Notes: generated by a model from the letters alone, not told the origin. DNA of 64,000 nt from Malacoraja senta (GCA_038087875.1 JAXLNO010002298.1:1-64000); one strand, 5' to 3'. Positions 2,053 to 32,281 are shown, counted from the stretch's first letter. Translations and numbers: made by a program.

Positions 2053-2090
<38 letters not shown>

Positions 2091-5270: not shown

Positions 5271-5348
5271 TCCGGATTTACGTATGAGCCAGACAAGCTT
5301 AAGCTTAGGGCCTCGAGATCTAGGGGGCCCCGGCCTGCTCCACCAAGG

Positions 5349-13358: not shown

Positions 13359-13455
13359 ATGCACAAAATGAGGCCGAGGTTTCTCTGCAGCAGTTTGCCA
13401 GTTGGTTTGATGTTCGGTTTCTTTGTTTTCCTGCTTCGACCAGTTTCCACACAGA
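13359..13455 (+). CDS. Signal-peptide exon of the multi-Ig receptor: MHKMRPRFLCSSLPVGLMFGFFVFLLRPVSTQ
   Basis: ATG at 13359 (alternative 13368), basic n-region and hydrophobic core, phase-1 donor CAGA|GTAAGT matching the phase-1 Ig exons downstream. Confidence 0.8.
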
Positions 13456-13589
13456 GTAAGTGCTTTCTCTTCGCCGGTCACAATCACGTTGCATTAATTA
13501 TCATTGTCCGTGTAAACCCGCACCCATTGTCAATCTCGCTTTCCTCTCCACATCCCTGAATGTCCTGCAGCCTCACAAATCCACGCCAT

Positions 13590-13830
13590 CCTTGCTGGAC
13601 CTCCATTTCTGAGACCATCCCATCAACTCCCTCTCCTTCTCCAGCACCGACACGGTCCTTATCAAAGTCAGAAATGGCCTCCTGTGAGCTTGTTGTAGAG
13701 TTAAACTCTCCCTCCTCATCCCGCTCAGCCTCTGCAGCCTTTGACACGGTTATCCACACAATCCTTCCCAGCATCTCCTCACCACAGTCCAGGTGGGTGG
13801 AACTGCCCTCGACTTATCGATCCAGTCGCA
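13590..13830 (+). mobile_element. Degenerate L2-clade LINE RT fragment
   Basis: STDTVLIKV...KLSLLI.L.LSAAFDTV.HTIL-like translation; similarity may extend over ~13500-14080. Confidence 0.55.
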
Positions 13831-14175
13831 GCCCGAGAACCACGCACAATGTCTTCACTTCACGCTCCCACAAAGTTCCTTCAAAACCAGGTGCAGTTCC
13901 TCCACTACCCTCAACACAACCCCCTATCCCCACCTCCGTCTCCCTCCCTCCCACTCACTCACTTCTCTCATGTGATGAAATATCCCTGCATCAATCAGGC
14001 CAGGTTATTCCAGACAGACATCTCTTCACAAACCGTGTCTTCCTCGCTGGGGTTTCCAAGGAAGATCACAACTGTCTGGAATTAAATTCACTTCAAAATT
14101 AATGATTACAGATATGGGGTGGGTGGGGAAAATGTGTTTTAAATGTTAATTCTTCATTGTTCGTATTCGCAACAG

Positions 14176-14517
14176 AAAACAGAAATCGAATGTATTTCTT
14201 GGATAACCGAAACGACATTGTGTTAAACGGAACAGACAATTCTGAGAAAGACACTGTTGTTGTCTGGAAATGGAAACCACACTCAGGGAAGAAAATCGGA
14301 AAATTGTCGACTTTTAGAAGAACGGGGGGCGATTGGATCAATGAGAAGGCCGCTGGCGAGAGTAAAGTGGACTTGTATCCGGAGATGAAAGTGAATTCCC
14401 GTACCCTTGATCTGACAATTGATAAACCCACATTTAAATGGGCGGGAATTTTCACTTTGGCTCAAACAGAACCGAGAAAGCAAATCCTGAAACAATATGA
14501 AATATTTGGGATGAAAG
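14176..14517 (+). CDS. Ig exon D1: cysteine-free V-like domain (type V'a), intact
   Basis: Acceptor TTCGCAACAG|, donor AAAG|GTGAGT, 342 nt, phase 1/1, open frame (..VVVWKWKPHSG..TLDLTIDKPTFKWAGIFT..); homologous to 25602-25946. Confidence 0.85.
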
Positions 14518-15149
14518 GTGAGTGGGTGCGATAAGGATCAATAATGTTTAATTTATCTCTGTAAATATTGTCACCTATAATGATGAGAGATGGCGGGAAT
14601 TGTGAGACTTCGTCCACCCGGTGAAAAGTTAAACAACTGGGGAAGTGTTTTTGTTCATTGATTCTGTAATGATCAGCAGGGGTGATAATAGTTTGATGAC
14701 TTCACTGGGAACAGCAAATCAACGAATCGACCCGCAGCGAATACCATGGTCTTCTTGCCGGCACACGGTAAGGTGATCGCGGCAAGGTGGTATGAAACCA
14801 ATGTCTCCGTGCAGTGGCCCCGGGGTGACATTGCTACTTAATGTTACCCTGTGACCAGGTGGATGGAAGTCCATCGCCTGTGGAACATGGGCTCTGCCAT
14901 AGAGTTCAGCTCTTGAGAGCAATCAGATACACCTAGAAGGAGTGGAAATAGATGCATTTTCAACAGTTTGTGAATATTTGAAACAGAACATGTGTAAATA
15001 CAACAACGCCTGAATGTTGCCGGTTCCACCTGCATTCCCACGGTGAACAGCCGGCATTTCACTGCGTCAATGTGACCAGCCACGGGTGTCAGGAGTCTGA
15101 GAGCACTGGGGGAGAAGTTGTTCTGACTTTCAGCTAGGCTGTCAGCTTT

Positions 15150-17156
15150 AAGCCCGGTTATTGGATGAACCATGACATCCGCACTCTTCTGAAGTCCAGA
15201 TCCCGGGCATTCAGGTCTGGAGATGCAGAGGTGTACAAGAAGTTCAGATACGACCTTGGTAAGGCCATCAAAAGTCCAAAAGGGACTTCTGCTCCAAGCT
15301 GGAGGATGAGACGGATGTTCGGCAACTGTGGTAGGGCTTGAATGCAATCACCTCCTATAAAGGCAAAATCAGGAGGTATCTCAAATGTCAGCGAGACATC
15401 ACTCCCTGACGAGCTCAATGCGTTCTATGCACGCTTTGATAGGCAGAACACCGATGTGCCTTCCCGAGCCCCCATTCGCTGTGATGGTATTTCAGTCTCA
15501 GTCACAGAGGCCAACGTCAGGAAATCCTTCAGAGGGGTGAACCCTCGAAAAGCGCCTGGACCTGATGGTATACCTGGTCGTGTTCTAAAAACCTGTGTGG
15601 ACCAACTGGCTGGAGTTTTTACGGATATTATCAACCTCTCACTTCTGAGGTCTGAGGTTCCCACCTGCTTTAAAAGGGCATCAATTATACCAGTGCCCAA
15701 GAAGAGCAAGGTGACGTGCCTCAATGACTATCGACCTGTGGCACTAACGCCTGTGGTGATGAAGTGCTTTGAAAGGTTGATCATGGCGCAAATCAACTCC
15801 TACCTCGACAAACACCTGGACCCACTGCAGTTCGCTTACCGCCACAACAGATCAACGGTGGATGCGATCTCGCTGGCCCTCCACTCCGCTCTGGACCACT
15901 TGGAGAACAAAAACTCATATGTCAGGCTGTTATTCATTGATTACAGCTCGGCATTTAACACAATCATCCCCTCCAAGCTGGTTGCCAAATTCTCTTATCT
16001 GGGTCTCTGCGCATCCCTCTGCAATTGGATCCTCGACTGCCTCATTCACAGACCACAGTCTGTTCGTATTGATGGAAATGTGTCAGACTCGATAACAATC
16101 AGCACGGGAGCACCTCAAGGCTGCGTGCTTAGCCCCCTGCCGTACTCACTCTATACTAATGACTGCGTAGCCGGACATAGTGCGAACTCCATCATCAAGT
16201 TCGCCGACAACACCACTGTTGTGGGACGTATCACTGATAGGGACGAGTCAGAGTATAGAAGAGAGATCGAGCAAATGACCAAATGGTGCCAGCACAATAA
16301 CCTGGCCCTCAACACCAGCAAAACCAAGGAACTGATTGTGGACTTCGGAAGGGGTAGGATGGGGACCCACAGTCTCGTTTATATCAACGGGTCGATAGTG
16401 AAAAGGGTCAAGAGCTTCAAATTCCTGGGCGTGCATATTTCTGAAGATCTCTCCTGGTCCCAGAACACTAATGCAATTATAAAGTAAGTACATCAGCGCC
16501 TCTACTTCCTGAGATGATTACGGAGAGTCGGTTTGTCAAGGAGGACTCTCTCGAACTTCTACAGGTGCACAGTAGAGAGCATGCTGACCGGTTGCATCGT
16601 GGCTTGGTTCGGCAACTTGAGCGCCCAGGAGCGGAAAAGACTACAAAAAGTAGTAAACACTGCCCAGTCCATCATCGGCTCTGACCTCCCTTCCATCGAG
16701 GGGATCTATCGCAGTCGCTGCCTCAAAAAGCCTGGCAGCATCATCAAGGACCCACACCATCCTGGCCACACACTCATCTCCCCGCTACCTTCAGGTAGAA
16801 GGTACAGGACCCTGAAATCTGCAACATCCAGGTTCAGGAACAGCTACTTCCCAACAGCCATCAGCCTATTAAACTCAACTTCAAACAAACTCTGAATTAT
16901 AACAGCCTATTACACTTTATCAGTTTATTTATGTGTGTTGCACTTTATCTGTTTATTTAATCAGACTATTAAACACAACTTCAAACAAACTCTGAATTAT
17001 AACAGCCTATTGCACTTTATCTGTTTATTTATGTGTGTATGTATATATATTCTGTGGTACATGGACACACTGATCTGATCTGTATTTATGCCTACAATGT
17101 TCTGTTGTGCTGCAGCAAGCAAGAATGTCATTGTCCTATCTGGGACTTGCCTTGTA
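15150..17156 (+). mobile_element. 5'-truncated Rex1/Babar LINE with RT ORF remnant (15342-16487), inactive
   Basis: Motifs [40 protein letters not shown] (catalytic DD changed to DN); in-frame stops; (CTTGA)n-type tail. Confidence 0.9.
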
Positions 17157-17200
17157 CAAACCACTACTCACTCTGAATCTCATTGATCTGTTTTTCACAG

Positions 17201-17470
17201 TTGAGGCAAGTCCACAGAGGCCTCTGCTGGGCAGTGATGTCACACTCAGCTGCACCATCTCCAGACTTTCAGATACAGTCAGTCTTCACTGGAGACCCAT
17301 GGACTCATCCCAGCAGAACAGGAGCAACACTGATCAGATCCGCCTGGATAACACGGTCTATCTGATGGTTCAACACGTTACAGTGGAGGATGGGAAGCTG
17401 TATGTGTGTGATGTGCAGGAAAACGGAAACATTGTTCACACAAGTAATGGAGATTTTACTGTAGACAACA
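17201..17470 (+). CDS. Ig exon D2: C2-type domain (C2a copy 1), intact
   Basis: TTTTTCACAG| ... AACA|GTGAGT, 270 nt; VTLSC...LHW...LYVC. Confidence 0.9.
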
Positions 17471-18510
17471 GTGAGTGTAAACACCTCCCATTGGATATCA
17501 AGTAGACTCTTGTATCACGGTGCTTCTTGTAATATTATGTGTGCGCCCTGTGAAGAACTGTGGCAGTGACCAACTGCTCTCCAGTATAAAATGCTGCAAT
17601 GAACAGGGAGAAGTTTACAGATAGTCTCTCTGTGGAGCAACTGCCTGCTTGTCTCTGTGTGACAGACACACAGCACAGGAGGGGGTAACCATTGTTCAGT
17701 AAAGTATTTTGTCAGTTTATCTTGCCATCAATGCTCCAGTATCTGGGACTGAGATACTGATACAGGACTCGCGTCAAAGTGTCAGATAGAAAGTGTAGTC
17801 ACCATGACAACCACCAGCGCTTGCTGCTCACACTCACACTGGGGGTCCCGGCCCACACATCAGCACTGAACAACAATCCATCCCCTCTCCCCTCACTGAC
17901 CCTTCTCTCCGAGTCTGGTGTTGCTTGAAGTGATTCCAGCTGCTGCAGACTCTGGCTTCGAATCAGCATTCAGCTGGGAGCAGGACCCGGGAACAGGGAA
18001 GGACAGGGAATCAATGGGTGTGAATGGGAGAGGGATGGTGGGAATAATGGGAATGAAGGGACGTGAAGACCCGACCCACTTGAAGTGCCAACCTGTCCAG
18101 GTCAGTCCCCGCGCAGGCATCCTCTGGGCTGCTTCTGTCCGCAGCCTGAACCTGCATCACCTCCTGCAGACAGACTGACAGAGATATTCACCTCCCAGAC
18201 CGCTCTCGGGAGTCTCCGGGAGGTTTCATTCCATCCCGGGAGATTCCCGGACAGTCCGGGTGTGGGGGCAAACCTAATGTTGAAATGTAGAGTGGAATAT
18301 CCAAACTTCACTGCAATTTACTGCCGTACAGGACATTGTATTTTATAAACATCTGATGAGTTTAGTGCGGCATTCATGAAAGATGTTACATTTGAAACTT
18401 GATCAGCTGAACAAAACACCACGAATGTTTATAAGAATACGGTTGAGAATCTCTGTATGGCACGGTAACTGTAATACTGAAAGGGGTTATCCTCTGTCTC
18501 TCTGATACAG

Positions 18511-18852
18511 ATTTATATAATGGGAGATACACACTTTACCGCTCCAGCACAGATCACAGTGAACTTCACGTGGTTTGTGATAATAGTTATGGTGATGGCT
18601 ATTCCCGTGCTCAGTGGACATGGGCACCTCTTCACCTTCAAAAGCAGAAAGTAATAGCATCTGCAGAACGTTCTCAGCCCATCAATGTCAATGGGACCGA
18701 CTTCGGGAATCGACTGGTTACCTCAGGGAAACCCTTCGATGGCAAGGATTTCAGTGTGAGCATTGTCCCCGTTTTGTTTCAAGATGCCGGAGTTTACACA
18801 TGTTATCTGGAATCAAATCCTTTTTTCGCCATTGATCTAATCACAGTGAAAG
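18511..18852 (+). CDS. Ig exon D3: V-type domain (V copy 1), intact
   Basis: CTGATACAG| ... AAAG|GTAGGA, 342 nt; C..QWTW..RL..DFSVSI..DAGVYTC. Confidence 0.92.
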
Positions 18853-18930
18853 GTAGGAGACAGAATGTTGCCACTGAGTTTAATGATGAACTTATTGTTT
18901 AAAATGTAAACAACCTGCTTGTTTCCACAG

Positions 18931-19191
18931 TCACAGCTGAACCGTCTGATGCAGTGACTGAGGGAGACACCGTTACCCTGACCTGCTCTGTGTCTCACGT
19001 CATTGGGTCAATGAGACTGGTTTGGATCAATGGCGATGGCAAAAGTGTTGGAGAAAAGACACTGACTGTGGAAGAGAAATCACGGAGTCTGTTTATTCAG
19101 TAAGCTGAGAGAGGCAGAGGGAACTGGAGATGTGGTTTGTTTCATCAAGACCTGCCCCGGCTTTTTGTCCCGTACTATCTGGAGCCCCGTG
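18931..19191 (+). pseudogene. Ig exon C2b copy 1 (WRC-type C2) with premature stop
   Basis: Splice sites intact, but in-frame TAA at 19101-19103 where copy 2 has AAA. Confidence 0.9.
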
Positions 19192-20188
19192 GTAAGTGAT
19201 AAGGGTTTGTTCTTCATACTTAGAGTCATGATTGAGTTTTGATGTCGCTTATTGATCCTGAAATTTGACTGCAATATTTTCTTCCAGTTTGAGTGGTCTA
19301 ACTATGTTATGAATACCGAATTCTCAAATTTCAAATAACACTTCCCGAACACCACTTCTCCCCCCCCTTCATTGTGCACGCATTTATCCCACCACCCAGT
19401 TATCCTATTCTCTTCCCTTCCTCTTTCAACTCATTTTCTCCCCCTTCCAATTGCAGTTTTCCTTTTATGTTCTTGCTCCACTTCCACCCATATCACTCCC
19501 TCTGTTACTGATCTGACTGTAGATCAGTCATTATTAGTTGACCTGATCTATGTCATGTTTTGCTGTGTACTCAAACAGTCATCATATTATCTAGTCTGTT
19601 AGTCCAGCCTCTAGTTAGATTCGTTGCTGAGCTTGAGTTTACAACACCTAAGTATTTGAGCTCTGTGTGTTTACTATAACAAACTACTTCTTCTTATGTA
19701 TGGATCCTGTTATTACACATGTTTTTACTGACAACCTTTTGTCTCCATTTCACCCCTCCATTTTGTCATTATCTCCATCCATCTACTCATCACCATTCCC
19801 CACCTGTATCCACCTATCACTCACCATGCTTTGTCTCATGCCTACTTCCCTTCCCCAGTTGTCACTCTCCCATTCCATCAGCCTGAGAATGCATCCTAAC
19901 ATGAAACGTCATCAATCCATTCCCTCCACAGATGCTGCCTGACCCATTGAGTTTCTCCAACACTTTGCGTTTGATCAACATTCCACAATCTGCAGTTTCT
20001 TGTGTCTCCATGGAGACCCACTGGTCAACGTGGACAGATTGCTGCAGAGGGCCTGTTTCCATGCTGTTCTATGATGATGAATTATAACGTACAACTTAGT
20101 AAAGATTAATTATCTGCAATATTGCTAATGACAAGGTCAGTGAAAAATTATTGTCCAACATTTACTAATTTATTCTCTTTTCCTACAG

Positions 20189-20532
20189 GAAGTGGACATT
20201 CTATTTACTTTTTCCATCAGGAAGGCAACTTTGTATTGAAAGGACCAGACAGTCCTGGAAATGACCCCATTGACTTGGAATGGAGGCCACACTCAGAGCA
20301 ACAAACCACAAAGCGATTGGCTCTTTCCGCAGAGAAGATCAGCAGTGGGCCGTACAATGGAGTGATGAGTAAAATCAAATACCAGGCATCTCACAGAGGA
20401 TGCATGCGGACTGGGGTACCCTTAATCTGAGGATCAGGATGCCCATATTCAAACTTGCGGGACTGTTCACCTGGAATCAGACACAGCCCGCTGGGAAAAC
20501 CCTGAGACAGTGGGAACTATTTGGGATTAAAG
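20189..20532 (+). pseudogene. Ig exon V'b copy 1 (Cys-free V-like) with 1-nt deletion
   Basis: 344 nt versus 345 nt in copy 2; TTGGCT-CTTTCC versus TTGGCCACTTTCC near 20321. Confidence 0.9.
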
Positions 20533-20689
20533 GTAATAGAGTCATGGTGTGACACAGCACTGAATCAGGCCCTTTGGCCCAATTCATCCATACTGACTAA
20601 CTACCCATCTAAACATCCAATTTGCCCTCATTTGACCCTTATCCCTTCAAACTTTTTTCCCATATACCTGTGTAAATGCCCTTTATGGA

Positions 20690-21230
20690 ATGGAGCAGGA
20701 ATATGCTGATATTCCCCGACACTGGCGCTGGGAAAACTGTTCCCGGATCCGATGCCTGCAGGGGTGGAGACTCTTCAGGAATCAAAACTAATCGTTACTG
20801 TAGAATTAGACTCTTTCATGATAAAACAAATGAAATATTCAATATTAATAAATGTGTTTACTTCTAAAAGTTGGTGCCACTCAGAACCATTCCAACAGCT
20901 TGGGAGCTTTTGCAGAGGATGAACAAGGCCTTTGCCTCCTGTAGATAATTCTCCACAGGTGTAAAGGGATTGGGATTTGTTCACTGCTCCAACGTTTGCC
21001 GAGATACATTGAATGAGGTTGGATCCAACTACTTTGATCTTCATGTTTTCCACAGCGAAATCTCCATTGCAGAATATTCTAGGCTGCAGGAGTACGTGCT
21101 GAGGGACACACTGAAGATCAGTGCAGACAAAGCAAAGGCATTGTGGAATAGAACTACAGTCCATGTACCTTCTGCCACCAGTCCCCGCCGAGCTAAATCT
21201 AATGTACAAACCTCTGAAACACTCTAATTG
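20690..21230 (+). mobile_element. Degenerate Tx1/L1-type LINE ORF2 C-terminal fragment
   Basis: SEISIAEYSRLQEYVLRDTLKISADKAKALWNRTTV resembles the Tx1 ORF2 end (QDYVLRDALK...WGKTTV); recalled similarity, not a database hit. Confidence 0.5.
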
Positions 21231-21571
21231 GTATAAGCTCAGGATGCAGTATGAGTGTCAAGAGTGTTATGTGCACAAAATGTGTGAACACTGCCAAAGT
21301 GAGGATCAATAACACTATGTCTGTGTAGTCTGAACAATATCAAATTCAGATTTAGATTCATATTAGTTCATTGTCATATACATTTGGGTACAACACATTC
21401 ATTGTTCAGATAAAGTAAATTATAATAAAAGTTACATTAAAAATGCAACAAAAGCAAAACAGCAGAATGGTGCAGAGATTGCAGTGCAGTCTAAAGTATG
21501 CAAAATAAAACTAACGTTTATGAAAATGCCCAATAGGATGATGAGTGTTTGTGGCTCTGTGCTTGGGCTCT

Positions 21572-22173
21572 GGGTCCGAGAACACTGATGCTACTATTAA
21601 GAAAGCACATCAGCGCCTCTACTTCCCGAGAAGATTACGGAGAGTCGGTTTGTCAAGCAGGACTCTCTCTAACTTCTACAGGTGCACAGTATAGAGCATG
21701 CTGACCCGTTGCATCGTGGCTTGGTTCGGCAACTTGAGCGCCCTGGAGAGGAAAAGACTACAAAGAGTAGTAAACACTGCCCAGTCCATCATCGGCTCTG
21801 ACCTCCCTTCCATCGAGGGGATCTATCGCAGTCACTGCCTCAAAAAAGCTGGCAGCATCATCAAGGACCCACACCATCCTGGCCACACACTCGTCTCTCC
21901 GCTGCCATCAGGTAGAAGGTACAGGAGCCTGAAGACTGCAACGTCCAGGTTCAGGAACAGCTACTTCCCCACAGCCATCAGGCTATTAAACACAACTTCA
22001 AACAAACTGTGAACTATAACAGCCTATTGCACTTTATTTGTTTATTTATGTGTGTATGTATATATATTCTATGGTACATGGACACACTGATCTGTTCTGT
22101 ATTTATGCCTACAAGATTCTGTTGTGCTGCAGCAAGCAAGAATGACATTGTCCTATCTGGGACTTGACTTGTA
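21572..22173 (+). mobile_element. Rex1/Babar 3' part; duplicate of 16450-17156 marking the start of tandem-duplication copy 2
   Basis: Same 3' junction (CTGGGACTTG..TTGTACAAACCACTACTC) as the element at 15150-17156. Confidence 0.85.
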
Positions 22174-22217
22174 CAAACCACTACTCACTCTGAATCTCAT
22201 TGATCTGTTTTTCACAG

Positions 22218-22488
22218 TTGAAGCAAGTCCACAGAGGCCTCTGCTGGGCAGTGATGTCACACTCAGCTGCACCATATCCAGACTCTCAGATACAGTCAGT
22301 CTTCACTGGAGACCCATGGACTCATCCCAGCAGAACAGGAGCAACACTGATCAGATCCGCCTGGATAACACGGTCTATCTGATGGTTCAACACGTTACAG
22401 TGGAGGATGGGAAGCTGTTTGTGTGTGATGTGCAGGAAAACGGAAACATTGTTCACACAAGTAACTGAGATTTTTACTGTAAACAAGG
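22218..22488 (+). pseudogene. Ig exon C2a copy 2 with late stop and +1 frameshift
   Basis: TGA at 22466-22468 (GGA in copy 1) followed by an extra T; 271 nt versus 270. Confidence 0.88.
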
Positions 22489-23231
22489 GTAAGTATAAAC
22501 ACCTCCCATTGGATATCAAGTAGACACTTGTATCACGGTGCTTCTTGTAATATTATGTGTGCGCCCTGTGAAGAACTGTGGCAGTGACCAACTGCTCTCC
22601 AGTATAAAATGCTGCAATGATCAGGGAGTTTACAGAAAGTCTCTCTGTGGAGCAGCTGCCTGCTTGTCTCTGTGTAACAGACACACAGCACAGGAGTGGG
22701 ATGTCTTTCTGTAACCATTGTTCAGTAAAGTATTTTGTCAGTTTATGTTGCCATCAATGCTCCAGTATCTGAGATCAAGATACTGATACAGGACTCACGT
22801 CAAAGTGTCAGATATAAAGTGTAGTCACCATGACAACCACCAGCACTTGCTGCTCACACTCACACTGGGGGTCCCGGCCCACACATCAGCACTGAACAAC
22901 AATCCATCCCCTCTCCCCTCACTGACCCTTCTCTCCGAGTCTGGTGTTGCTTGAAGTGATTCCAGCTGCTGCATATTCGGGCTTCGGATCAGCATTCAGC
23001 TGGGAGCAGGGCCCGGGAACAGGGAAGGACAGGGAATCAATGCGTGTGAATGGGAGAGGGATGGTGGGAATAATGGGAATGAAGGGACGGAAAGACCCGA
23101 CCCACTTGAAGTGTCAACCTGTCCGGGTCAGTCCCCGCGCAGGCATCCTCTGGGCTGCTTCTGTCCGCAGCCTGAACCTGCACCACCTCCTCCAAACAGA
23201 CTGACAGAGACATTCACCTCCCATACCTCTC

Positions 23232-23605
23232 TCAAGTCAAGTCAAGTGAGTTTATTGTCATGTGTCCCTGATAGGACAATGAAATTCTTGCTTTGCTTCA
23301 GCACAACAGAACATAGTAGGCATTGACTACAAGGCATTCTGTAAATATATACACACATGAATCAATATACTGATAAAGTGCAAATAACAGTATTGGCTTA
23401 TAAAGTTCAGTGTTATGTCCGAGCCAGGTTTAATAGGCTGATGGCTGTGGGGAAGTAGCTGTTCCTGAACCTGGTCGATGCATTCTTCAGGCTACTGTAC
23501 CTTCTACCTGAAGGTAGTAGGGAGATGAGTGTGTGGCCAGGATGGCGTGGGTCCTTCATGATACTGCCAGCCTTTTTGAGGCAGCAACTGTGATAGATCC
23601 CCTCG
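23232..23605 (-). mobile_element. Rex1/Babar 3' fragment inserted only in tandem copy 2
   Basis: Reverse-complement tail TCAAGTCAAGTCAAGTGAGTTTATTGTCATGTGTCCC; absent at the paralogous site near 18205. Confidence 0.85.
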
Positions 23606-23907
23606 GGAGTCTCCGGGAGGTTTCATTCCATCCCGGGAGATTCCCGGACAGTTCGGGTGTGGGGGAGAACCTAATGTTGAAATGTAGAGTGGAATATCCA
23701 AACTTCACTGCAATTTACTGCCGTACAGGACATTGCATTTTATAAAGATCTGATGAGTTTAGTGCGGCATTCATGAAAGATGTTACATTTGAAACTTGAT
23801 CAGCTGAACAAAACACCACGAATGTTTATAAGAATACGGTTCAGAATCTCTGTATGGCACGGTAACTGTAATAGTGAAAGGAGATATCCTCTGTCACTCT
23901 GATACAG

Positions 23908-24249
23908 ATCTATATAAGAGGAGATACACACTTTACCGCTCCAGCACAGATCACAGTGAACTTCACCTGGTTTGTTCTGTGAGTTATGGTCGTAGCTATT
24001 CCAGTGCTCAGTGGACCTGGGCATCTCATCACCTTCAACAGCAGAAAGTAATAGCATCTGCAGACCGTTCTCAGCCCATCAATGTCAAAGGGACCGACTT
24101 CAGGAAACGACTGGTGACCTCAGGGAAACCCTTCGATGGCAAGGATTTCAGTGTGAGGATTGTACCCGTTTTGTTTCAAGATGCCGGAGTTTACACATGT
24201 TATCTGGAATCAAATCTATTTCCCACCATTGATCTAATCACAGTGAAAG
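23908..24249 (+). CDS. Ig exon V copy 2, intact
   Basis: CTGATACAG| ... AAAG|GTAGGA, 342 nt, open frame, both canonical Cys present. Confidence 0.92.
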
Positions 24250-24327
24250 GTAGGAGTCAGAATGTTGCCACTGAGTTTACTGATGAACTTATTGTTTAAA
24301 ATGTAAACAACCTGCTTGTTTCCACAG

Positions 24328-24588
24328 TCACAGCTGAACCGTCTGATGCAGTGACTGAGGGAGACACCGTTACCCTGACCTGCTCTGTGTCTCACGTCAT
24401 TGGGTCAATGAGACTGGTTTGGATCAATGGCGATGGCAAAAGTGTTGGGGAAATGACACTGACTGTGGAAGAGATATCACTGAGTCTGGTTATTGAGAAA
24501 GCTGAGAGAGGCAGAGGGAACTGGAGATGTGGTTTGTTTCATCAAGACCTGCCCCAGCTTTTTGTCCCGTACTATCAAGAGCCCCGTG
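24328..24588 (+). CDS. Ig exon C2b copy 2 (WRC-type C2), intact
   Basis: TTTCCACAG| ... CGTG|GTAAGT, 261 nt; VTLTC..LVW..GNWRCGLF. Confidence 0.92.
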
Positions 24589-25601
24589 GTAAGTGATAAG
24601 GGTTTGTTCTTCATACTTAGAGTCATGATTGAGTTTTGATGTCGCTTATTGATCCTGAAATTTGAGTGCAATATTTTCTTCCAGTTTGAGTGGTCTAACT
24701 CTGTTATGAATACCTTATTCTCAAATTTCAAATAACACATCCCGAACCCCACTTATCCCCCCCTTCATTGTGCACGCATTTATCCCACCACCCAGTTATC
24801 CTATTCTCTTCCCTTCCTCTTTCAACTCATTTCTCACCCTTCCAATTGCAGAGTATTCCTTTTATGTTCTTGCTCCACTTCCACCCATATCCCTCCCTCT
24901 GTTACTGATCTAACTGTAGATCAGTCAGTATTAGTTGACCTGATCTATGTCATGTTTTACTGCATGCTGCTGTGTACTCAAACAGTCATCATATTATCTA
25001 GTCTGTTAGTCCAGCCTCTAGTTAGATTCGTTGCTGAGCTTGAGCTAACAACACCTAAGTATTTGAGCTCTGTGTGTTTACTATAACAAACACCTTATTC
25101 TTATGTATGGATCCTGTTATTACACATGTTTATACTGACAACCTTTTGTCTCCATTTCACCCCTCCATTTTTTCATTATCTCCATCCATCTACTCATCAC
25201 CATCCCCCACCTGTATCCACCTATCACTCGCCATGCTTTGTCTCATGCCTACTTCCCTTCCCCAGTTGTCACTCTCCCATTCCATCAGCCTGAGAATGCA
25301 TCCTGACATGAAACGTCATCAATCCATTCCCTCCACAGATGCTGCCTGAGTTCATCTCCCTGAGTTTCTCCAACACTTAGCGTTTGATCAACATTCCACA
25401 ATCTGCAGTTTCTTGTGTCTCCATGGAGACCCACTGGTCAGCATGGGCAGATTGCTGCAGAGGGCCTGTTTCCATGCTGTTCCATGATGATGAATTATTA
25501 CGTACAACTTAGTAAAGATTAATTGTCTGCAATATTTCTAATGACAAGGTCAGTGAAAAATTATTGTCCAACATTTACACATTTGTTCTCTTTTCCTACA
25601 G

Positions 25602-25946
25602 GAAGTGGACATTATATTTACTTTTTCCATCAGGAAGGCAACTTTGTATTGAAAGGACCAGACAGTCCTGGAAATGGCCCCATTGACTTGGAATGGAGGC
25701 CACACTCAGGGCAACAAACCACAAAGCAATTGGCCACTTTCCGCAGAGCAGATCAGCAGTGGGCCGTACAATGGAGTGATGAGTACAATCAAATACCAGG
25801 CATCTCCCAGTGGATGCATGCGGACTGGGGTACCCTTAATCTGAGGATCAGGATGCCCACATTCAAATTTGCAGGACTGTTCACCTGGAATCAGACACAG
25901 CCCGCTGGGAAAATCCTGAGACAGTGGGAACTATTTGGGATCAAAG
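25602..25946 (+). CDS. Ig exon V'b copy 2 (Cys-free V-like), intact
   Basis: TTTTCCTACAG| ... AAAG|GTAATA, 345 nt, open frame. Confidence 0.9.
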
Positions 25947-26507
25947 GTAATAGAGTCATAGTGTCACACAGCACTGAAACAGGCACTTTGGCCCAATTCA
26001 TCCATACTGACCAACTACCCATCTAAACATCCAATGTGCCCTCATTTGGCCCATATACCAACCGTTTTTCCATATACCTGTTTAAATGCCATTAAATACT
26101 GTACCTGCATCAAACACTTCCTCTCCTCGATCTTTCCATAAAGTATGTTAATGTACCACACTTTTTGTCAAAAAAATGCCCCTAATATTAAGGGGTATAT
26201 CAAATCTGCCCCACTCACCTTAATCATGTACTATCTAGTTTTTCATTCCACAGCCCTGGAAAAAAGACCATGTGCGTTTACTATAGATATGCCTCTCATG
26301 ATTCACCCCAATATGATCACCCCTCAGTAAAAGACATCCAAGGAAAATAATCAGTCTGAAGAAGGGTCTCGACCTGAAACATCACCTATCTATGTTTTCT
26401 AAAGTTGCTGCTTGATCTACTGAATTGCTGCTGCACTTTATGTCCTTTTATATATTAACCAGCATCTGCAGTTCTGCGTTTCTACTGTACTAAAAACATC
26501 CCTACCT

Positions 26508-26748: not shown

Positions 26749-27021
26749 TTGAGGCAGACTCACCGAGGCCAGTGATGGGCAGTGACATCACCCTCAGCTG
26801 TACCATCTCCAGACTCCCAGATACCATCAGTCTTCACTGGAAACCAAGAGGCTCATCTCAGCAGAACAGGAGGAACAACACTGATCAGATGCGTCTGAAT
26901 AACGCCGTCTATCTGATGATCCAACACATTGGAGCAGGAAATCCCAATCTGTACACATGGGAAGTGCAGGAAAATGGCTCCATTGTTCTCACTGGAGACA
27001 CCAATGTTGAAGTGGCTCAGG
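26749..27021 (+). CDS. Ig exon C2c (F-strand Cys replaced by Trp, LYTW); frame open but acceptor mutated
   Basis: 273 nt, donor CAGG|GTGAGT; acceptor TTTCCAGAG versus TTTCCACAG in the right arm, creating a CAG 2 nt upstream. Confidence 0.8.
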
Positions 27022-27709: not shown

Positions 27710-28048
27710 GTTTACATAACAAAACGTACACAGTTTATCGCTCAGTCACAGATCACAGTGAACTCGACCTGATTTGTGAAGCTTCCCCTGAGCTCAGTGA
27801 AACCAAATGGACTTGGAGATCACAACGTTTCCAGAATCAAGAGAAGGAAATAGCTTCTTCTCACAGGTCTGAGCCGATACATGTCGACAGGAGCTACTTT
27901 GGGAATCGACTGGAAACCACAGAGGGAAATGTGAATGGCAAGAATTTCCGTGTGAGGATTGTCCCCGTGCAGTTTGCAGATGCCGGAGTTTACACATGTT
28001 CCACGGGATCAAATATATATGTGACCATTGATCTAATCACAGTTACAG
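27710..28048 (+). CDS. Ig exon V3 (V-type), intact; missed by the ORF track
   Basis: CTCTTGCAG| ... ACAG|GTAGGA, 339 nt; LDLIC..KWTW..NRLE..NFRVRI..DAGVYTC. Confidence 0.92.
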
Positions 28049-28419
28049 GTAGGAGACTGGATGCTGCCAGCTTTTTAGATTCCTTGTAGTAGAGCACCTA
28101 CTTTGAATGCAAGCGGCAATTTCTGTGCAAATTTCTCCAAATATTCCCTTCTTTTAAAGAACTGATTTTGCTCCAGAATTCCAGATATTTATTTGTGTTT
28201 TACTCAACACAAAATCAATCATGAAACAGTGTATCAGGTAGCGTATGGCATTGAAGCATTTTTCTTTTCATATTTAAGGGCGATGATGTGGAATTGATTC
28301 ACCCGCTGGAAATGGGTCCATCATAGAAAAAAATAATCCCCAATGAAGGTCCAATGAGAGTATATTCAGGATCCTGTATCATGTGTCATTCACAGGAGAC
28401 TCTGTGTGGCATCCTGCCA

Positions 28420-28750
28420 TTGGAATGTGTCAGTGTGGGGAAGGGTTTGACCCCAGCACAGTGGAATGTGTCAGTGTGGGGAAGGGTTTGACTCCAGCAC
28501 AGTGGAATGTGTCAGTGTGGGGAAGGGACAGTGGACTGGGGCAGTGTGGGAAAAGGGTTGACTCCAACACAGTGGATTGGGGCAGTGTGGGGAAGGGGTT
28601 GACTCCAACACAGTGGACTGGGGCAGTGTGGGGAAGGGGTTGATTCCAACACAGTGGACTGGGGCAGTGTGGGGAAGGGGTTGACTCCAACACAGTGGAC
28701 TGGGGCAGTGTGGGGAAGGGGTTGACTCCAAAACAGTGGACTGAGGCAGT
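28420..28750. repeat. ~41-bp VNTR, short allele (left arm)
   Basis: CAGTGGACTGGGGCAGTGTGGGGAAGGGGTTGACTCCAACA units. Confidence 0.9.
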
Positions 28751-29128
28751 GCTGTGACCAGCAGCTGCTTGTTGTGCAGTGTTTTGAGTTGGTTTCATTG
28801 ATTGTGGAAACTCAAGTTGCACAATATAAATGTAACCAATTACATTATTAAGTCTTTTCATTCACCTTCAAGGACTCAGCATTGACCCTCCATAGAAAAC
28901 CATTCCCACAGATTGGTCTTTTTACTGGAGATCACCCCTTCATCATTTGTCTGGTGTCTGTGGTCTCTTTTCTATTGCTGTTCACCGCAGCATACAATAA
29001 AACAGTTTCTAAACAATACGAGTTGTCCTTTAGGTCGGTCGTGGGGATATCAGGGCATTGATAAAGAAATCAATAGAGTAGAAACTCTGGCTGCTGTTCA
29101 AAATCACAATGATGTTCTTGTTACACAG

Positions 29129-29373
29129 TCAAAGCCGAACCATCTGATGCAGTGATTGAGGAAAACAAAGTTACCCTGATCTGCTCTGTGTCTCACGTCA
29201 CTGAGTCAATGAGACTGGTTTGGAACAGCAGTGATGGCAAAATTATGGGAGAGACATTTTTGAAGGATTCAAGAGAGGAAGTGTGGTCTTTGCAGCTGAT
29301 TATTCCAAAAGCTGGGACAGTGAGAAGGAAATGGACATGTGGATTGTTTCATCAAAACAGCCTCAAGCTGAGC
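29129..29373 (+). CDS. Ig exon C2d (WTC-type C2); last codons and splice donor removed by a 39-bp deletion
   Basis: TTACACAG| acceptor, RRKWTCGLF; the right arm has 39 extra nt that include AACG|GTAAGT. Confidence 0.85.
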
Positions 29374-29768
29374 TTGTGTTACATCACAACATGTTCTGCT
29401 CAGTTGCTGCTCTCTCTTTTGTATAATGGCCTCACGCCCAATGACTCAGCATTGATCTTCCAAGGAAAATCCTTACCACAGATTGATCTTTTTACCAGAG
29501 TTCACCCCCTAATCATTCGTATAGTGTCTATAGTCTCTCTTCTATTGCTGGTCACTTAGGAAAGGTATAAAGATAGAGATGCTGAACAACAGATTCTAAT
29601 GAAAATTGCTCCAGTCAACTGACAGCAGTGGCTGCTACAACAATGTGTAAAAAAGATCACACATGTATCTTAGGTACACATCAATTATCTTTCAAATGTT
29701 AAAGAGAAATCAGTTCATAACCATAACTACATGCATATGTTGCATGTCAATTGAACTATTAAGAATAA

Positions 29769-30101
29769 CTAGACCAAGAGCAGACCCGTTGGGTTGGGAC
29801 CCTGAACGTGCTTCAGACCCTGGGGTCTGGTTCCCGAACGTGCGGCAGCAGCCGTTATGGTGGCTTTCTAGCAGGAGGCGACAAAATGAGTGTGGGGGGG
29901 GGGGGTTATTTTAAAACGTGTACATAAAAATGTCTAAATCTAATGTGTTAGGGTATGTAAAAGTGTAATGTCTAGCGAAATGGAAAAAATCGCGGAATTT
30001 TCACGTGTGGTTTTGGCGGAGCAAGGAATCAAAGGCCAAATGTGACACCCACAAATAAATAAACACATCCACACACACACAGAGATTTAATAGTATATAG
30101 A
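29769..30101 (-). mobile_element. Complete 333-bp non-autonomous Helitron, left arm only
   Basis: Minus strand: 5' TCTATATAC..., 3' hairpin (ACCCAACGGGT) then CTAG; inserted between A and T with no TSD; empty site present in the right arm near 57536. Confidence 0.9.
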
Positions 30102-31270
30102 TTACAGAATTAACTATTGTTAATGGATGCGTATACACAATCGTTTACTTTATACGGTGATTAGATTTATGTTTATTGTTCTCTTGAGTACAATCTCTAC
30201 ATGTGAATCTAAACTTTTCCACTGCATACAATTCCAGGTTTGATGATTTCAGTGAACATTTCTACAATAGGTTTCGCATCTGATTAATCTCACATTCGGT
30301 AACATAGTTGTACCTTGACTGTAGTAAATACTTGACATTTCAGGCATTTCCAAACAAAATTCTAACTGCAGATTTCACAAGGACAAATAACAACCTTCAA
30401 CTACTACTGGAGTAATAATTAGACTTTTTTCCCAGTATAATCCTAAATAAAACAATTTCTGATTTTAAGTCTCCCATATTTCTATCAATGCCCAATGCTA
30501 CAGATCAAAGTGTAATTACACTGGAGCCTGTCGATTGATGGCATAATGTTATATCAGTGAATAAAGCAAAATCAAATATAAAGCATTTTGTGTTTACATG
30601 TTACAGAAACACAGATCTTTCAAACCCATACATGAGAGTAAAATTGAAGCAAGATTGCACCTTTGTAAAATGGACATTTCTTTAAATAAACCCAAGTGAG
30701 TGAGCCATGCCTCTCACACCTCACTGGGTAATGGATAGAACAGGTTTGTAGGGATATGGACCAAGCTTGGGGGAGGTAGGTAACTGGGACATGTAAGTTG
30801 GGCCGAAAGATTTGTTTCCACGCTGCATCACTCTATGACTCTCTGACTCTATTAGTTTCTCAGGCAATACGGCCCAGAGTAGGAATTCAGATCCTGCAGA
30901 GTCTCAGCTGTGAATCTGTATCCACGCCCTCTTGTGTAGACACATTGGTGAACACCTGGTTGACATCAGTTTAGATAATCGATCAACCTATTTTGTGTAT
31001 ATTTAGACCCAAAAATATTCACAATGTTCCAAAGGTAATGACGCAGAAAATATCAAACAGAAGTCCTCAGATGTTATGGACGCGAAATAAAAGGTACCCT
31101 GGACTTAGACGTGGCACAAATATTTCTCACTGTGTCCCAGTATTTAATTCAGAATGTTTATGATGTCACATCACAGACTGGAGTATTTAATTATGAAACA
31201 CGGTGGAGAAAGAAAATGAAAATGTCAATTTTGTCCTTCACAGGATCATTAGACATTTTGTCCTTCACAG

Positions 31271-31359
31271 ACATTAGGATCATCATAGTTCTGGGCTACT
31301 TGTCGATTAAACTGGCCGTTGCTCTTGAACTAATTTGCTGCGCTTTGTGGATGAACAGG
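31271..31359 (+). CDS. Transmembrane exon: (D)IRIIIVLGYLSIKLAVALELICCALWMNR
   Basis: TTTTGTCCTTCACAG| ... AACAGG|GTGAGA, phase 1/0; hydrophobic helix with Lys (31309-31311); second in-frame acceptor at 31244. Confidence 0.85.
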
Positions 31360-31478
31360 GTGAGAATTTCATGAGCTTTTCAATATATCAGAAACCAATG
31401 GCGGGGTGTCTCTGACATTGAGAAAATGGATGTTCATATTAGAGTGATGACAATCTGTATTTTAGTGTTTTTGCATAG

Positions 31479-31498
31479 AACAGTGCAGCACAGAAATC
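31479..31498 (+). CDS. Candidate 20-nt cytoplasmic micro-exon (NSAAQKS)
   Basis: GTGTTTTTGCATAG| ... TC|GTGTGT; phase 0/2 bridges the TM exon to the next candidate exon; identical in the right arm (55150-55169). Confidence 0.4.
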
Positions 31499-31522
31499 GT
31501 GTGTGGACGTGGCATCGAAGGA

Positions 31523-31966
31523 CGAGAAGCTGAAGCAAAGAAGTCGAAGCCAAATAGCCGAATGGAAACGAAGCCGAAACGCCAACGAACCGAAAGGGCG
31601 TGACGCCGAAACGCCAACAACCCGAAAGGCTGCGTCGCCTACAAGCCAACTAACCGAATGGCCGCTCTGCCGAAAAGCCAAATAATGGCTTGTGTGGGAA
31701 AATGCCCCCCACCCTCCCGTCTCCACCGGCCAGTGATGTGATGGACGAGTTGGTCTGGAACAATCGCTGACAAGTCCCGCCCCCCCGGCGACGTCATGTC
31801 CGTTATTTGACTTTTCGGCAGAGCGGCCATTCGGTTAGTTGGCTTGTAGGTGACGCAGCCTTTCGGTTTCTTGGCTTTTAGGCGTCCCGCCCTTTCGGTT
31901 CATTTGCCGTTTCGGCTTCGTATGCTTTCGGTTATTTGGCTTCGAATTCTTTGCTTCGGCTTCTCG
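31523..31966. mobile_element. Fold-back (MITE-like) element with ~160-bp internally repetitive TIRs
   Basis: CGAGAAGCTGAAGCAAAGAAGTCGAAGCCAAATAGCCGAA... mirrored by ...TTCGGTTATTTGGCTTCGAATTCTTTGCTTCGGCTTCTCG; CCGAA motifs about every 10 bp. Confidence 0.75.
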
Positions 31967-32056
31967 AACGGAGACTTTGGAAATAGATTTGTGGGTTTAT
32001 TGTGCATTTGCTTTGTGCTTGTTTGGTTTGTTGCCGGTGTTGTTTCTATCCCACAG

Positions 32057-32120
32057 TGAACATGTCAACAGTCCCAGTCTCAGTGCTGGTTATTACACTT
32101 CACAAAGACCATCTCCTCAG
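32057..32120 (+). CDS. Candidate 64-nt cytoplasmic exon (EHVNSPSLSAGYYTSQRPSPQ)
   Basis: TTTCTATCCCACAG| ... TCAG|GTCAGT; open in phase 2/0; conserved in the right arm (54529-54592). Read in phase 0 it begins with TGA. Confidence 0.45.
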
Positions 32121-32230
32121 GTCAGTGTGATATTTCTATGAGGGCAACTATTGCTGACTTTGGGGTGAATTCCTGATCTCCACTTGTGTCCAGTGAGGCT
32201 CTACACTTTGACACATTTTTATCGCTGCAG

Positions 32231-32281
32231 GGACTGGTGGTGACCCAGCTGTGTGTGGAGCTTGATGGAATGTGGATTTGA
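32231..32281 (+). CDS. Candidate terminal coding exon (GLVVTQLCVELDGMWI*)
   Basis: TTTTTATCGCTGCAG| acceptor; frame depends on the two preceding candidate exons; right-arm copy at 54368-54418. Confidence 0.35.
   Translation, partial: GLVVTQLCVELDGMWI

What the first reader, a model, noticed from the sequence alone, without database searches (positions are those of the whole stretch)
13359..32281. Modular multi-Ig immune-type receptor with CD4/LAG-3-like C2 domains, hidden from the ORF track
Seen: canonical splice sites join a signal peptide, 12 Ig exons, a TM exon and short tail exons. The ectodomain is a four-domain module (Cys-free V, C2, canonical V, WxC-C2) present three times; every Ig exon is phase 1/1. 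Known: a W-x-C F-strand in C2 domains and a V-C2-V-C2 layout are hallmarks of CD4/LAG-3. Inference: this is not CD4 or LAG-3 itself, since it has at least 8 domains, the Cys-free V comes first, there is no CxC/CxH Lck motif in the predicted tail, and the TM is charged. It may be a lineage-specific, possibly uncharacterised relative.
Basis: partly seen in the sequence, partly recalled or inferred. Interest (0 to 1): 0.8.

Follow-up and report, generated by a model that had tools for sequence, protein, structure and literature searches.

The report
Decaying skate CD4/LAG-3-like activating receptor gene
This skate locus holds a real but damaged gene from a large, still unnamed fish family of paired "brake/accelerator" immune receptors built from a four-domain unit shaped like CD4, LAG-3 and G6f. 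It is an eight-domain gene with a recent internal duplication and several broken exons, not a twelve-domain receptor.

Summary
The exons are real. There is a leader, 12 phase-1 Ig-like exons in the order Cys-free V, C2, V, WxC-C2, and a Lys-bearing TM exon. The "three modules" reading is wrong. Domain trees and a 94-96% identical tandem repeat show an ancestral two-module (8-Ig) gene that recently duplicated four exons (D2-D3-D4-D1). Three of the eight duplicated exons are broken: D4a has a stop, D1b a frameshift, D2b a stop. D4c has lost its last strand and splice donor in this assembly, although a DNA run carries an intact allele. An inverted, also broken paralogue lies tail-to-tail. No tail exons were found.

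The family is real and large. It occurs in sharks, rays, a chimaera and many teleosts, and nearly all members are annotated "uncharacterized". It has ITIM-tailed forms and short-tailed forms with Lys in the TM; this locus is the second type.

The family's profile hits LAG-3 first among all PDB sequences. Its predicted structure hits CD4 and LAG-3 first, with G6f-like equally close in shape. It fails the defining CD4 and LAG-3 tail motifs and has WxC only in D4.

This scan had already found the family on other DNA of this genome. Whether this copy still makes an 8-9-Ig receptor by exon skipping is unresolved; I lean towards decay.

The parts
13359..13455 (+). Leader (signal peptide) exon. ATG at 13359, ends in phase 1, donor GTAAGT.
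   Evidence: Sequence read. The peptide MHKMRPRFLCSSLPVGLMFGFFVFLL... resembles the leaders of P0008 and P0003.
14176..14517 (+). D1a: Cys-free V-like exon of the first module. Intact.
   Evidence: It clusters with first-module D1 domains (support 96/91). Pfam does not recognise it.
17201..17470 (+). D2a: C2-type exon of the first module. Intact.
   Evidence: 88-94% identical to first-module D2 of skate proteins.
18511..18852 (+). D3a: canonical V exon, copy A. Intact.
   Evidence: Sister of D3b inside the first-module D3 clade.
18931..19191 (+). D4a: WxC-C2 exon, copy A. Broken by an in-frame TAA at 19101-19103 (AAA in D4b).
20189..20529 (+). D1b: duplicate of the second-module Cys-free V exon. 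Broken by a 1-bp deletion near 20322, downstream stops and a TAC>TAA change.
22218..22487 (+). D2b: duplicate C2 exon. Broken near its 3' end by TGA at 22466-22468 and two 1-bp insertions. A shorter exon ending at 22460 is conceivable.
23908..24249 (+). D3b: canonical V exon, copy B. Intact. It differs from D3a at 8.5% of bases (19 nonsynonymous and 4 synonymous codon differences), against ~4% in the neighbouring introns.
24328..24588 (+). D4b: WxC-C2 exon, copy B. Intact (NWRCGLF).
25602..25946 (+). D1c: Cys-free V exon of the second module. Intact.
   Evidence: In the second-module clade (support 100/99). The joint 25944>26747 is seen in spliced contigs of a paralogue.
26749..27021 (+). D2c: C2 exon of the second module. 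Intact. The second Cys is replaced by Trp (YTWEV), as in other batoid second-module D2 domains.
27710..28048 (+). D3c: canonical V exon of the second module. Intact.
29129..29372 (+). D4c: WxC-C2 exon of the second module (KWTCGLF). A 39-bp deletion right after 29372 removes the last strand and the GTAAGT donor. A weak cryptic donor lies at 29392.
   Evidence: DNA run X3 has a contig that matches both flanks at ~99% and carries 36 extra letters, including GGTAAGT (tables 5c and 8).
31244..31374 (+). Stalk/TM exon of the activating type: ...DIRIIIVLGYLSIKLAVALELICCALWMNR. There is an alternative acceptor at 31271 and a GT at 31360. If the donor is not used, the frame ends ...VRIS with a stop at 31372-31374.
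   Evidence: P0129 of Leucoraja erinacea has the same DIRIII...KL TM. The family consensus has W and G where this copy has R and E.
16456..26093 (+). Two copies of a ~5.4 kb tandem duplication: 16456-20683 and 21573-26093, 94-96% identical. Each carries a LINE tail, D2, D3, D4 and the next D1.
52572..64000 (-). Inverted paralogue (gene 2), tail-to-tail, 91-96% identical to 24769-33998. D1 is 63163-62834 (TGA at 62893-62891 and a 12-bp deletion). D2 is 61760-61491. D3 is 60801-60464 (a 2-bp AT insertion causes a frameshift). D4 is 58203-57946, intact with its donor. TM is 55382-55296. Gene 2 runs off the window.

Best explanation
The locus is a member of a large, unnamed multigene family of type I Ig-superfamily receptors. 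The family is found in cartilaginous fishes and many teleosts.

The family's building block is a four-domain unit: Cys-free V, C2, canonical V, WxC-C2. It forms two rigid V-C2 rods. Its nearest known relatives in sequence and shape are CD4 and LAG-3, and G6f/G6f-like in shape.

Most members carry ITIM tails and are inferred to be inhibitory through SHP recruitment. A minority have a Lys in the TM helix and a short tail, and are inferred to be activating by pairing with a DAP12- or FcR-gamma-type adaptor. This gene has the second kind of TM exon.

It is ancestrally a two-module, 8-Ig gene. A recent tandem duplication added a second set of the exons D2-D3-D4-D1. Three of those eight exons have since been disabled. 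In this assembly the last Ig exon has also lost its donor. An inverted paralogue 20 kb downstream is broken too.

As assembled, it cannot make a 12-Ig protein. I judge it most likely a decaying activating-type copy, meaning a pseudogene or a null haplotype of a polymorphic gene. This is typical of the fast birth-and-death turnover of such families.

Shown: the exons, the lesions, the duplication history, the breadth of the family, and the structural and sequence neighbours. Inferred: signalling mode, adaptor pairing and functional state.
For: Exons and lesions.

Duplication. The trees place D1a, D3a and D3b in first-module clades and D1c and D3c in second-module clades.

Family:
- D1c found only 34 representative clusters among 1.8 billion proteins; 19 of the 20 best-scoring ones looked up are chondrichthyan.
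- 62 and 90 chondrichthyan hits, nearly all 'uncharacterized'.
- 65 hits, nearly all from named teleost species (one carries no name), with the same domain order and WxC in D4 only.
- Architectures are (D1-D4)n with n = 1-4.
- Tails: 82 of 90 have an ITIM and none an ITAM. 62 of 90 have YxN, against 23% in shuffled tails. 22 of 140 have the GYLxVKL TM.

Neighbours: LAG-3 is first in profile-versus-PDB searches (E 2e-12 and 3e-15). LAG-3 and CD4 are first in Foldseek. CD4 D3-D4 gives Z 15.8. G6f-like clusters come next by features and shape.

Decay:
- Gene 2 has lesions in non-duplicated exons.
- Exon and intron divergence between the two genes are nearly equal: 2.4-3.4% versus 3.2-6.5%.
- The TM carries G>E and W>R against the family consensus.
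- The only spliced contigs recovered come from another copy; 7 of 29 diagnostic bases match gene 2 and none match gene 1.
Against: - For every duplicated exon type one intact copy survives, and the unique exons (leader, D1a, D2c, D3c, TM) are all open. All Ig exons are phase 1, so skipping the dead exons would give an in-frame 8- or 9-Ig receptor with the family's commonest layout. By my count this pattern has about a 0.15 chance under random hits, so it is only weak evidence for retained function.
- The D4c deletion is not fixed. A DNA run has an intact version.
- D3a and D3b differ mostly by amino-acid-changing substitutions (19 versus 4). This could reflect diversifying selection on a working gene.
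- The lesions in 17000-24600 could not be checked against reads.
Confidence: 0.58

Rival explanations
1. The gene is functional. The three dead exons (and one of the two V exons, or neither) are skipped, giving an 8- or 9-Ig activating receptor with a Lys-bearing TM. D3a and D3b may serve as alternative V exons.
For: - Exon loss is complementary: one intact copy of each duplicated exon type remains.
- All exons are phase 1/1.
- The resulting D1-D2-D3-D4-D1-D2-D3-D4-TM layout is the family's commonest.
- An intact D4c allele exists in DNA run X3.
- D3a and D3b show excess nonsynonymous divergence.
- K-TM 8-Ig relatives are annotated, such as P0067 and P0089.
Against: - No transcript of this copy was seen.
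- The broken exons keep good splice sites, so skipping four consecutive exons is not the default outcome.
- In this assembly the D4c donor is missing.
- The TM has a Glu where the family has an invariant-looking Gly.
- Exon and intron divergence from gene 2 are nearly equal.
Confidence: 0.33
2. One reading: an intact modular receptor with three four-domain modules (12 Ig domains) plus TM and short tail exons.
For: Twelve Ig-like exons with canonical splice sites are present. Natural 12- and 16-Ig members of the family exist (P0048 and P0001).
Against: - There are stops or frameshifts in D4a, D1b and D2b.
- The 'middle module' is a chimera of duplicated first-module D2-D4 and second-module D1.
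- No tail exons were found.
Confidence: 0.03
3. The family is simply the cartilaginous-fish and teleost G6f-like (LY6G6F) lineage, or the DICP family, under automatic 'uncharacterized' names. It would then be known, not new.
For: - ESM Atlas clusters auto-named 'g6f-like' are the nearest by features (0.97) and by shape (TM 0.71-0.76 for D3-D4).
- Rat LY6G6F matches D3-D4 at TM 0.61.
- The family tails share a YxN motif with G6f/G6fL (PMC3528668).
- DICPs also come as D1a-D2a-D1b-D2b with ITIM or charged-TM forms (bioRxiv 10.1101/2021.06.11.448072).
Against: - G6fL is described as an ITAM-bearing thrombocyte collagen receptor (PMC3528668). None of 90 long family tails has an ITAM and 82 have ITIMs.
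- None of the 217 sequence hits carries a g6f or DICP name.
- DICP D1 domains have C23 and C104 plus extra cysteines; the family's D1 has none.
Confidence: 0.12
4. The tandem and inverted duplications are assembly artefacts (mis-joined haplotypes or collapsed paralogues), and only one simple 8-Ig gene exists here.
For: The window has nine N gaps, five of them between the two inverted arms. The X3 contig disagrees with the assembly at the D4c deletion.
Against: The copies differ by 4-9% with many indels. That is far above allelic divergence as I understand it for such genomes. The two copies carry different lesions.
Confidence: 0.05

Closest known systems
LAG-3 (CD223)
   Same: - V-C2-V-C2 unit.
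- WxC in the F strand of a C2 domain.
- LAG-3 is the best PDB sequence match of the family profile (E 1.9e-12 for the module, 3.4e-15 for D3-D4). The alignment runs from the late V domain through the whole C2, with nWtC aligned on PWGC.
- First Foldseek hits in the PDB.
- LAG-3 D3-D4 matches the D3-D4 rod at Z 12.4.
- An inhibitory family branch exists.
   Different: - No (F/Y)xxL(D/E) tail motif (2 of 140); classical ITIMs plus YxN instead.
- WxC in D4 only.
- D1 has no disulfide.
- One to four units per protein.
- Dozens of paralogues per genome.
- Bona fide LAG-3 exists separately in sharks (PMC10768021).
CD4
   Same: - A four-domain ectodomain made of two rigid V-C2 rods, each with a continuous strand from V into C2.
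- Of the top 17 Swiss-Prot AlphaFold matches, 14 are CD4 and 3 LAG-3, aligned over all four domains.
- Rat CD4 D3-D4 is the best of 48,161 PDB representatives for the D3-D4 rod (Z 15.8, rmsd 2.8 A over 170 of 177 residues).
- One V domain per unit lacks the disulfide.
   Different: - No Cx(C/H) LCK motif (1 of 140).
- The Cys-free V comes first, not third.
- The sequence signal is weaker than for LAG-3 (E ~1e-8 to 1e-6).
- Multigene family with ITIM or K-TM signalling.
- Shark CD4 is a separate gene (PMC10768021).
G6f (LY6G6F) and teleost G6f-like (G6fL)
   Same: - Ectodomain of Ig-like domains (four in G6fL).
- Conserved membrane-proximal YxN in the tail (PMC3528668).
- Nearest ESM Atlas clusters by features and shape.
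- Rat G6f matches at TM 0.61.
   Different: - G6fL signals through an ITAM and is a thrombocyte collagen receptor (PMC3528668); this family has ITIMs or a Lys-bearing TM.
Paired Ig receptor multigene families (KIR/LILR, NITR, DICP, LITR)
   Same: - ITIM-tailed and charged-TM short-tailed members within one family.
- Clustered genes, many pseudogenes and fast birth-and-death turnover, as known for these families.
- The DICP D1a-D2a-D1b-D2b layout (bioRxiv 10.1101/2021.06.11.448072).
   Different: The domain types and their order are different. D1 lacks the cysteines that define DICP D1 and NITR domains. The family's range includes cartilaginous fishes.

Membership tests
CD4 | Cx(C/H) LCK-binding motif in the cytoplasmic tail (PMC10768021) | tested here: not met
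   This gene's possible tail is ...WMNRVRIS. Only 1 of 140 family tails has Cx(C/H).
CD4 / LAG-3 | V-C2-V-C2 ectodomain of two rigid rods | tested here: met
   AF2 models have pLDDT 87.8 and 90.0. CD4 and LAG-3 are the top structural matches over all four domains. hhalign of D1-D2 against D3-D4 gives 97%, E 4e-11.
CD4 / LAG-3 | WxC motif in strand F of both D2 and D4 (PMC10768021) | tested here: not met
   D4 has an invariant W-x-C. D2 has YxC, or YxW in batoid second modules.
LAG-3 | (F/Y)xxL(D/E) inhibitory tail motif (PMC10768021) | tested here: not met
   Found in 2 of 140 family tails. The tails carry IHYxSI- and VIYAQI-type ITIMs instead.
CD4 / LAG-3 | Single gene in the conserved CD4-LAG3 neighbourhood | not testable with these tools
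   The window holds only the two family genes and repeats. The family has many paralogues per species.
G6f / G6f-like | Cytoplasmic YxN (Grb2 site); in G6fL followed by an ITAM (PMC3528668) | tested here: inconclusive
   YxN is present in 62 of 90 long tails, against 23% in shuffled tails. An ITAM is present in 0 of 90. This gene has no long tail.
G6f / G6f-like | Sequence orthology to LY6G6F / G6fL | not tested
Only structure and feature neighbours are available.
DICP | D1 and D2 domains each with C23 and C104, plus DICP-specific cysteines (bioRxiv 10.1101/2021.06.11.448072) | tested here: not met
   The family's D1 has no cysteine at all. Its invariant residues are Y, G, W, W, G, Q, F.
Unnamed fish (D1-D2-D3-D4)n receptor family | Cys-free V with the W..W..AGxFT..QTxP..F motifs, followed by C2, V and WxC-C2, all on phase-1 exons | tested here: met
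Unnamed family, activating subtype | TM motif GYL(x)(V/I)KL with a central Lys and a short tail | tested here: met
   The window has VLGYLSIKLAVALELICC. 22 relatives have the motif, and P0129 shares DIRIII.

The most novel reading that the evidence does not exclude
The (Cys-free V, C2, V, WxC-C2)n family may be the long-missing multigene sister lineage of CD4, LAG-3 and G6f. It would be an ancient jawed-vertebrate family of paired inhibitory and activating receptors, lost in tetrapods, whose members bind MHC-like or other polymorphic ligands. In this gene the two diverged V exons D3a and D3b would be used as alternative exons to vary ligand recognition.
Probability: 0.15. Interest if true: 0.8.

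Novelty: new variant of a known kind. Interest (0 to 1): 0.5.

Why it matters
CD4 and LAG-3 are regarded as a small, isolated pair of MHC class II co-receptors, and their origin is traced only to a V-C2 duplication. This family is large and old, and it spans sharks to teleosts. It has the same rod-shaped V-C2-V-C2 unit, a WxC C2 domain, and both ITIM-tailed and Lys-TM forms. It would provide an outgroup for that origin. It would also add an uncharacterised set of candidate innate (NK- or myeloid-type) receptors in cartilaginous fishes, where few such families are described.

This particular copy adds a clear example of the family's birth-and-death dynamics: an intragenic exon-block duplication, complementary exon loss, an inverted gene duplicate, and a deletion that appears to be polymorphic. 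It is probably not a working receptor itself.

Tried and rejected
- **Pfam on D1.** D1 exons gave no Ig match. A D1 profile against the PDB gave nothing below E 0.05. D1 is called V-like only from the AF2 model and from hhalign against D3.
- **D1-D2 profile against the PDB.** It gave NCAM and antibody constant domains, not CD4 or LAG-3. The CD4/LAG-3 sequence signal therefore sits in D3-D4 only.
- **D4 profile alone.** It is weak (E ~1e-4, SYG-2 and CD276 on top). Only LAG-3 D2 aligns end to end.
- **Tail exons.** tblastn with the tails of relatives and motif scans found none downstream of the TM exon.
- **RNA evidence for this copy.** Of four runs, the only spliced contigs are ~95% alike and come from another copy or species. 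No read-level check of the lesions at 17000-24600 was possible, because only one read-laying run is allowed.
- **Word-indexed protein searches.** They never reached CD4, LAG-3 or G6f, so there is no ranking against them at sequence-database scale.
- **Flanking genes for synteny.** The rest of the window is repeats, LINE fragments and N gaps.
- **Literature.** No paper describing this family was found. The nurse shark entry 'obscurin-like' (V9NJF3) has no associated text in the library.

Full report
**What is in the sequence**

On the + strand there is a leader exon (13359-13455, ATG to a phase-1 GTAAGT donor). Twelve Ig-like exons follow. Each is bounded by AG and GT, has a length divisible by three, and reads in phase 1/1. 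They repeat in a fixed order:
- D1, a V-sized exon without any cysteine.
- D2, a C2-type exon.
- D3, a canonical V exon.
- D4, a C2-type exon with W-x-C in place of Y-x-C.

Pfam recognises D2, D3 and D4 as Ig/V-set but not D1. A stalk/TM exon lies at 31244-31359, with a second in-frame acceptor at 31271. It encodes ...DIRIIIVLGYLSIKLAVALELICCALWMNR, with a Lys in mid-membrane.

**What is not as described**

Three of the twelve Ig exons are broken as assembled:
- D4a has AAA>TAA at 19101-19103.
- D1b has a 1-bp deletion near 20322, with stops downstream and a further TAC>TAA.
- D2b has two 1-bp insertions and TGA at 22466-22468.

The last Ig exon, D4c, lacks 39 bp that D4b and the paralogue both have. 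This stretch encodes the final strand and contains the GTAAGT donor.

I found no exons resembling the cytoplasmic tails of relatives downstream of the TM exon. If the GT at 31360 is not used, the frame ends five codons later (...VRIS, stop at 31372-31374). That resembles the annotated end of a sawfish relative (MNRGRIF...).

**History of the locus**

Segment 16456-20683 recurs at 21573-26093 at 94-96% identity. The repeated unit is a LINE tail, D2, D3, D4 and the next D1. Maximum-likelihood trees of D1 and D3 domains, including 31 eight-domain relatives, give this placement:
- D1a sits in a supported clade of first-module D1 domains (96/91).
- D1c sits in a clade of second-module D1 domains (100/99).
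- D3a and D3b are sisters (100/98) inside first-module D3.
- D3c sits inside second-module D3.

The gene is therefore ancestrally D1-D2-D3-D4-D1-D2-D3-D4, which is the family's commonest layout.

For each duplicated exon type one intact copy remains: D2a, D4b and D1c. Both D3 copies are intact. D3a and D3b differ at 8.5% of bases, with 19 nonsynonymous and 4 synonymous codon differences, against about 4% in the adjacent introns.

A second copy of the 3' half lies inverted and tail-to-tail (64000-52572 matches 24769-33998 at 91-96%). It has its own lesions:
- TGA and a 12-bp deletion in D1.
- A 2-bp insertion in D3.
- A Pro>Arg change at a near-invariant position.

Its D4 is intact, with its donor.

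Substitution divergence between the two genes is 2.4-3.4% in exons and 3.2-6.5% in introns. This means little purifying selection has acted since they separated.

**Read evidence**

Only four runs held parts of the stretch.
- Two runs that are probably RNA contain contigs with GT..AG joints at exactly D1c>D2c, D2c>D3c and D3c>D4c, and a piece of the TM exon. These contigs differ from this gene at about 5% of positions, and only 7 of 29 diagnostic bases match gene 2. They validate the exon borders but come from another copy or species.
- One DNA run (X3) has a contig that matches both flanks of the D4c deletion at about 99% and carries 36 extra letters, including the donor (tables 5c and 8). 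The contig lacks the 7-bp gap that marks gene 2. The deletion is therefore polymorphic or an assembly fault.

**The family**

- The Cys-free D1c exon found only 34 representative clusters among 1.84 billion proteins. Of the 20 best-scoring ones looked up, 19 are chondrichthyan 'uncharacterized proteins' from catshark, manta, electric ray, horn shark, sawfish, sawshark, skates and elephant shark, and the twentieth carries no name; weaker hits include eel.
- Searches with an 8-Ig manta member and with a module profile gave 62 and 90 hits. All are chondrichthyan. A few carry automatic names: obscurin-like, VCAM1-like and CD276 homolog.
- An eel module found 65 more hits in eels, tarpon, salmonids, mormyrids, and a cypriniform, a characiform and gymnotiforms. 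These have the same domain order, a Cys-free D1, WxC only in D4, and ITIM tails.
- Architectures are (D1-D4)n with n = 1 to 4.
- Of 90 long tails, 82 have ITIMs and none has an ITAM. 62 have YxN, against 23% in shuffled tails.
- 22 of 140 members have the TM motif GYLxVKL with short tails.

The window's TM belongs to this Lys-TM type. It is closest to Leucoraja erinacea LOC129695223, which shares DIRIII. The window's TM has Glu where relatives have Gly.

**Relation to known families**

- A profile of 26 modules searched against all 177,635 PDB sequences ranks LAG-3 first (E 1.9e-12). CEA and pIgR follow closely, and CD4 scores about 2e-6.
- The D3-D4 profile gives LAG-3 at 3.4e-15, pIgR at 2e-13 and CD4 at 1.4e-8. 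The LAG-3 alignment runs through the whole C2 domain and its WxC.
- D4 alone is weak, D1 alone finds nothing, and D1-D2 finds NCAM and antibody constant domains.
- The AF2 model of a module (pLDDT 87.8) hits LAG-3 and CD4 first in the PDB. In Swiss-Prot AlphaFold the top 17 are all CD4 or LAG-3, aligned over all four domains.
- The D3-D4 model (pLDDT 90) superposes best on rat CD4 D3-D4 (Z 15.8, rmsd 2.8 A over 170 of 177 residues). CD4 D1-D2 gives Z 13.1 and LAG-3 D3-D4 gives Z 12.4.
- Rat G6f (TM 0.61) and ESM Atlas clusters named g6f-like are equally near by shape and by language-model features.
- D1-D2 and D3-D4 are themselves related (hhalign 97%, E 4e-11). This fits a V-C2 duplication like the one proposed for CD4/LAG-3 (PMC10768021).

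Membership in the known families fails:
- The tails lack Cx(C/H) and (F/Y)xxL(D/E).
- WxC is in D4 only.
- Bona fide CD4 and LAG-3 exist separately in sharks (PMC10768021).
- G6fL is an ITAM-bearing thrombocyte collagen receptor (PMC3528668).
- DICP D1 domains have cysteines that this D1 lacks (bioRxiv 10.1101/2021.06.11.448072).

**Mechanism**

The following is inferred from motifs and from established knowledge of paired receptors.
- ITIM members would recruit SHP phosphatases.
- Lys-TM members, including this gene if it is expressed, would pair with an acidic TM residue of a DAP12- or FcR-gamma-type ITAM adaptor.
- The ligand is unknown.

**Functional state of this copy**

Complementary exon loss and uniform phase 1 allow an in-frame 8- or 9-Ig product by exon skipping. 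That pattern alone has roughly a 0.15 chance probability. Several observations argue against function:
- The assembly's D4c lacks a donor.
- The TM carries unusual charges.
- The twin gene is dead.
- Exon and intron divergence are similar.
- No transcript of this copy was seen.

I put decay at about 0.58 and function by exon skipping at about 0.33.

**Earlier notes of this scan**

The scan had already described the duplication with complementary exon loss, the Lys in the TM, the diverged twin V exons, and, on other pieces of this genome, the same unnamed CD4/LAG-3/G6f-like family. My tests agree with them.

Noticed in passing
15342-16892 (+); partial copy at 21573-22055: A LINE-type reverse-transcriptase ORF (381 aa open) sits in the D1a-D2a intron. 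Its 3' end forms the upstream edge of the duplicated unit, so the element predates the duplication.
   Followed up: partly
28404-28751 (+) and 58585-60100 (-): A minisatellite of roughly 75-150 bp units lies in the D3c-D4c intron. It is greatly expanded in the inverted paralogue, where it creates spurious open frames of 361-545 aa.
   Followed up: no
18511-18852 versus 23908-24249: The two intact V exons D3a and D3b differ twice as much as the flanking introns, mostly by amino-acid changes (19 nonsynonymous, 4 synonymous). This could be diversifying selection or conversion from another paralogue.
   Followed up: partly
29372/29373: The 39-bp deletion that removes the D4c donor is absent from a DNA-run contig that matches both flanks at ~99%. 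This is a presence/absence polymorphism or an assembly fault.
   Followed up: partly
1-6000: There is extreme G-over-C skew (0.90 and 0.57 in the first two 2-kb windows), low-complexity sequence and four N gaps. No gene was seen there.
   Followed up: no
32925-33366 (+) and 53282-53723 (-): Short tandem repeats give open frames such as VDSQFTQ.../HGLWTHSSLS... in both arms of the inverted duplication. These are not coding by any test made here.
   Followed up: no
Relatives P0061, P0064, P0065, P0056, P0009 (manta, stingray): A third TM type in the family carries an Arg (IILVITRSLVLL...) with a ~30-50 aa tail that has no ITIM.
   Followed up: no
Relatives P0048 (Heptranchias, 12 Ig), P0001 (catshark, 15-16 Ig), P0025 (eel, 19 or more Ig): Natural long members with three or more modules exist, so module number is labile in the family.
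   Followed up: partly
Family cytoplasmic tails (e.g. P0002, P0011, P0174, P0187): A conserved membrane-proximal YxN (mostly LYSN), followed by two ITIMs (IHYxSI and VIYAQI types), is shared between sharks/rays and teleosts. YxN is also the motif that links G6f and G6f-like.
   Followed up: partly
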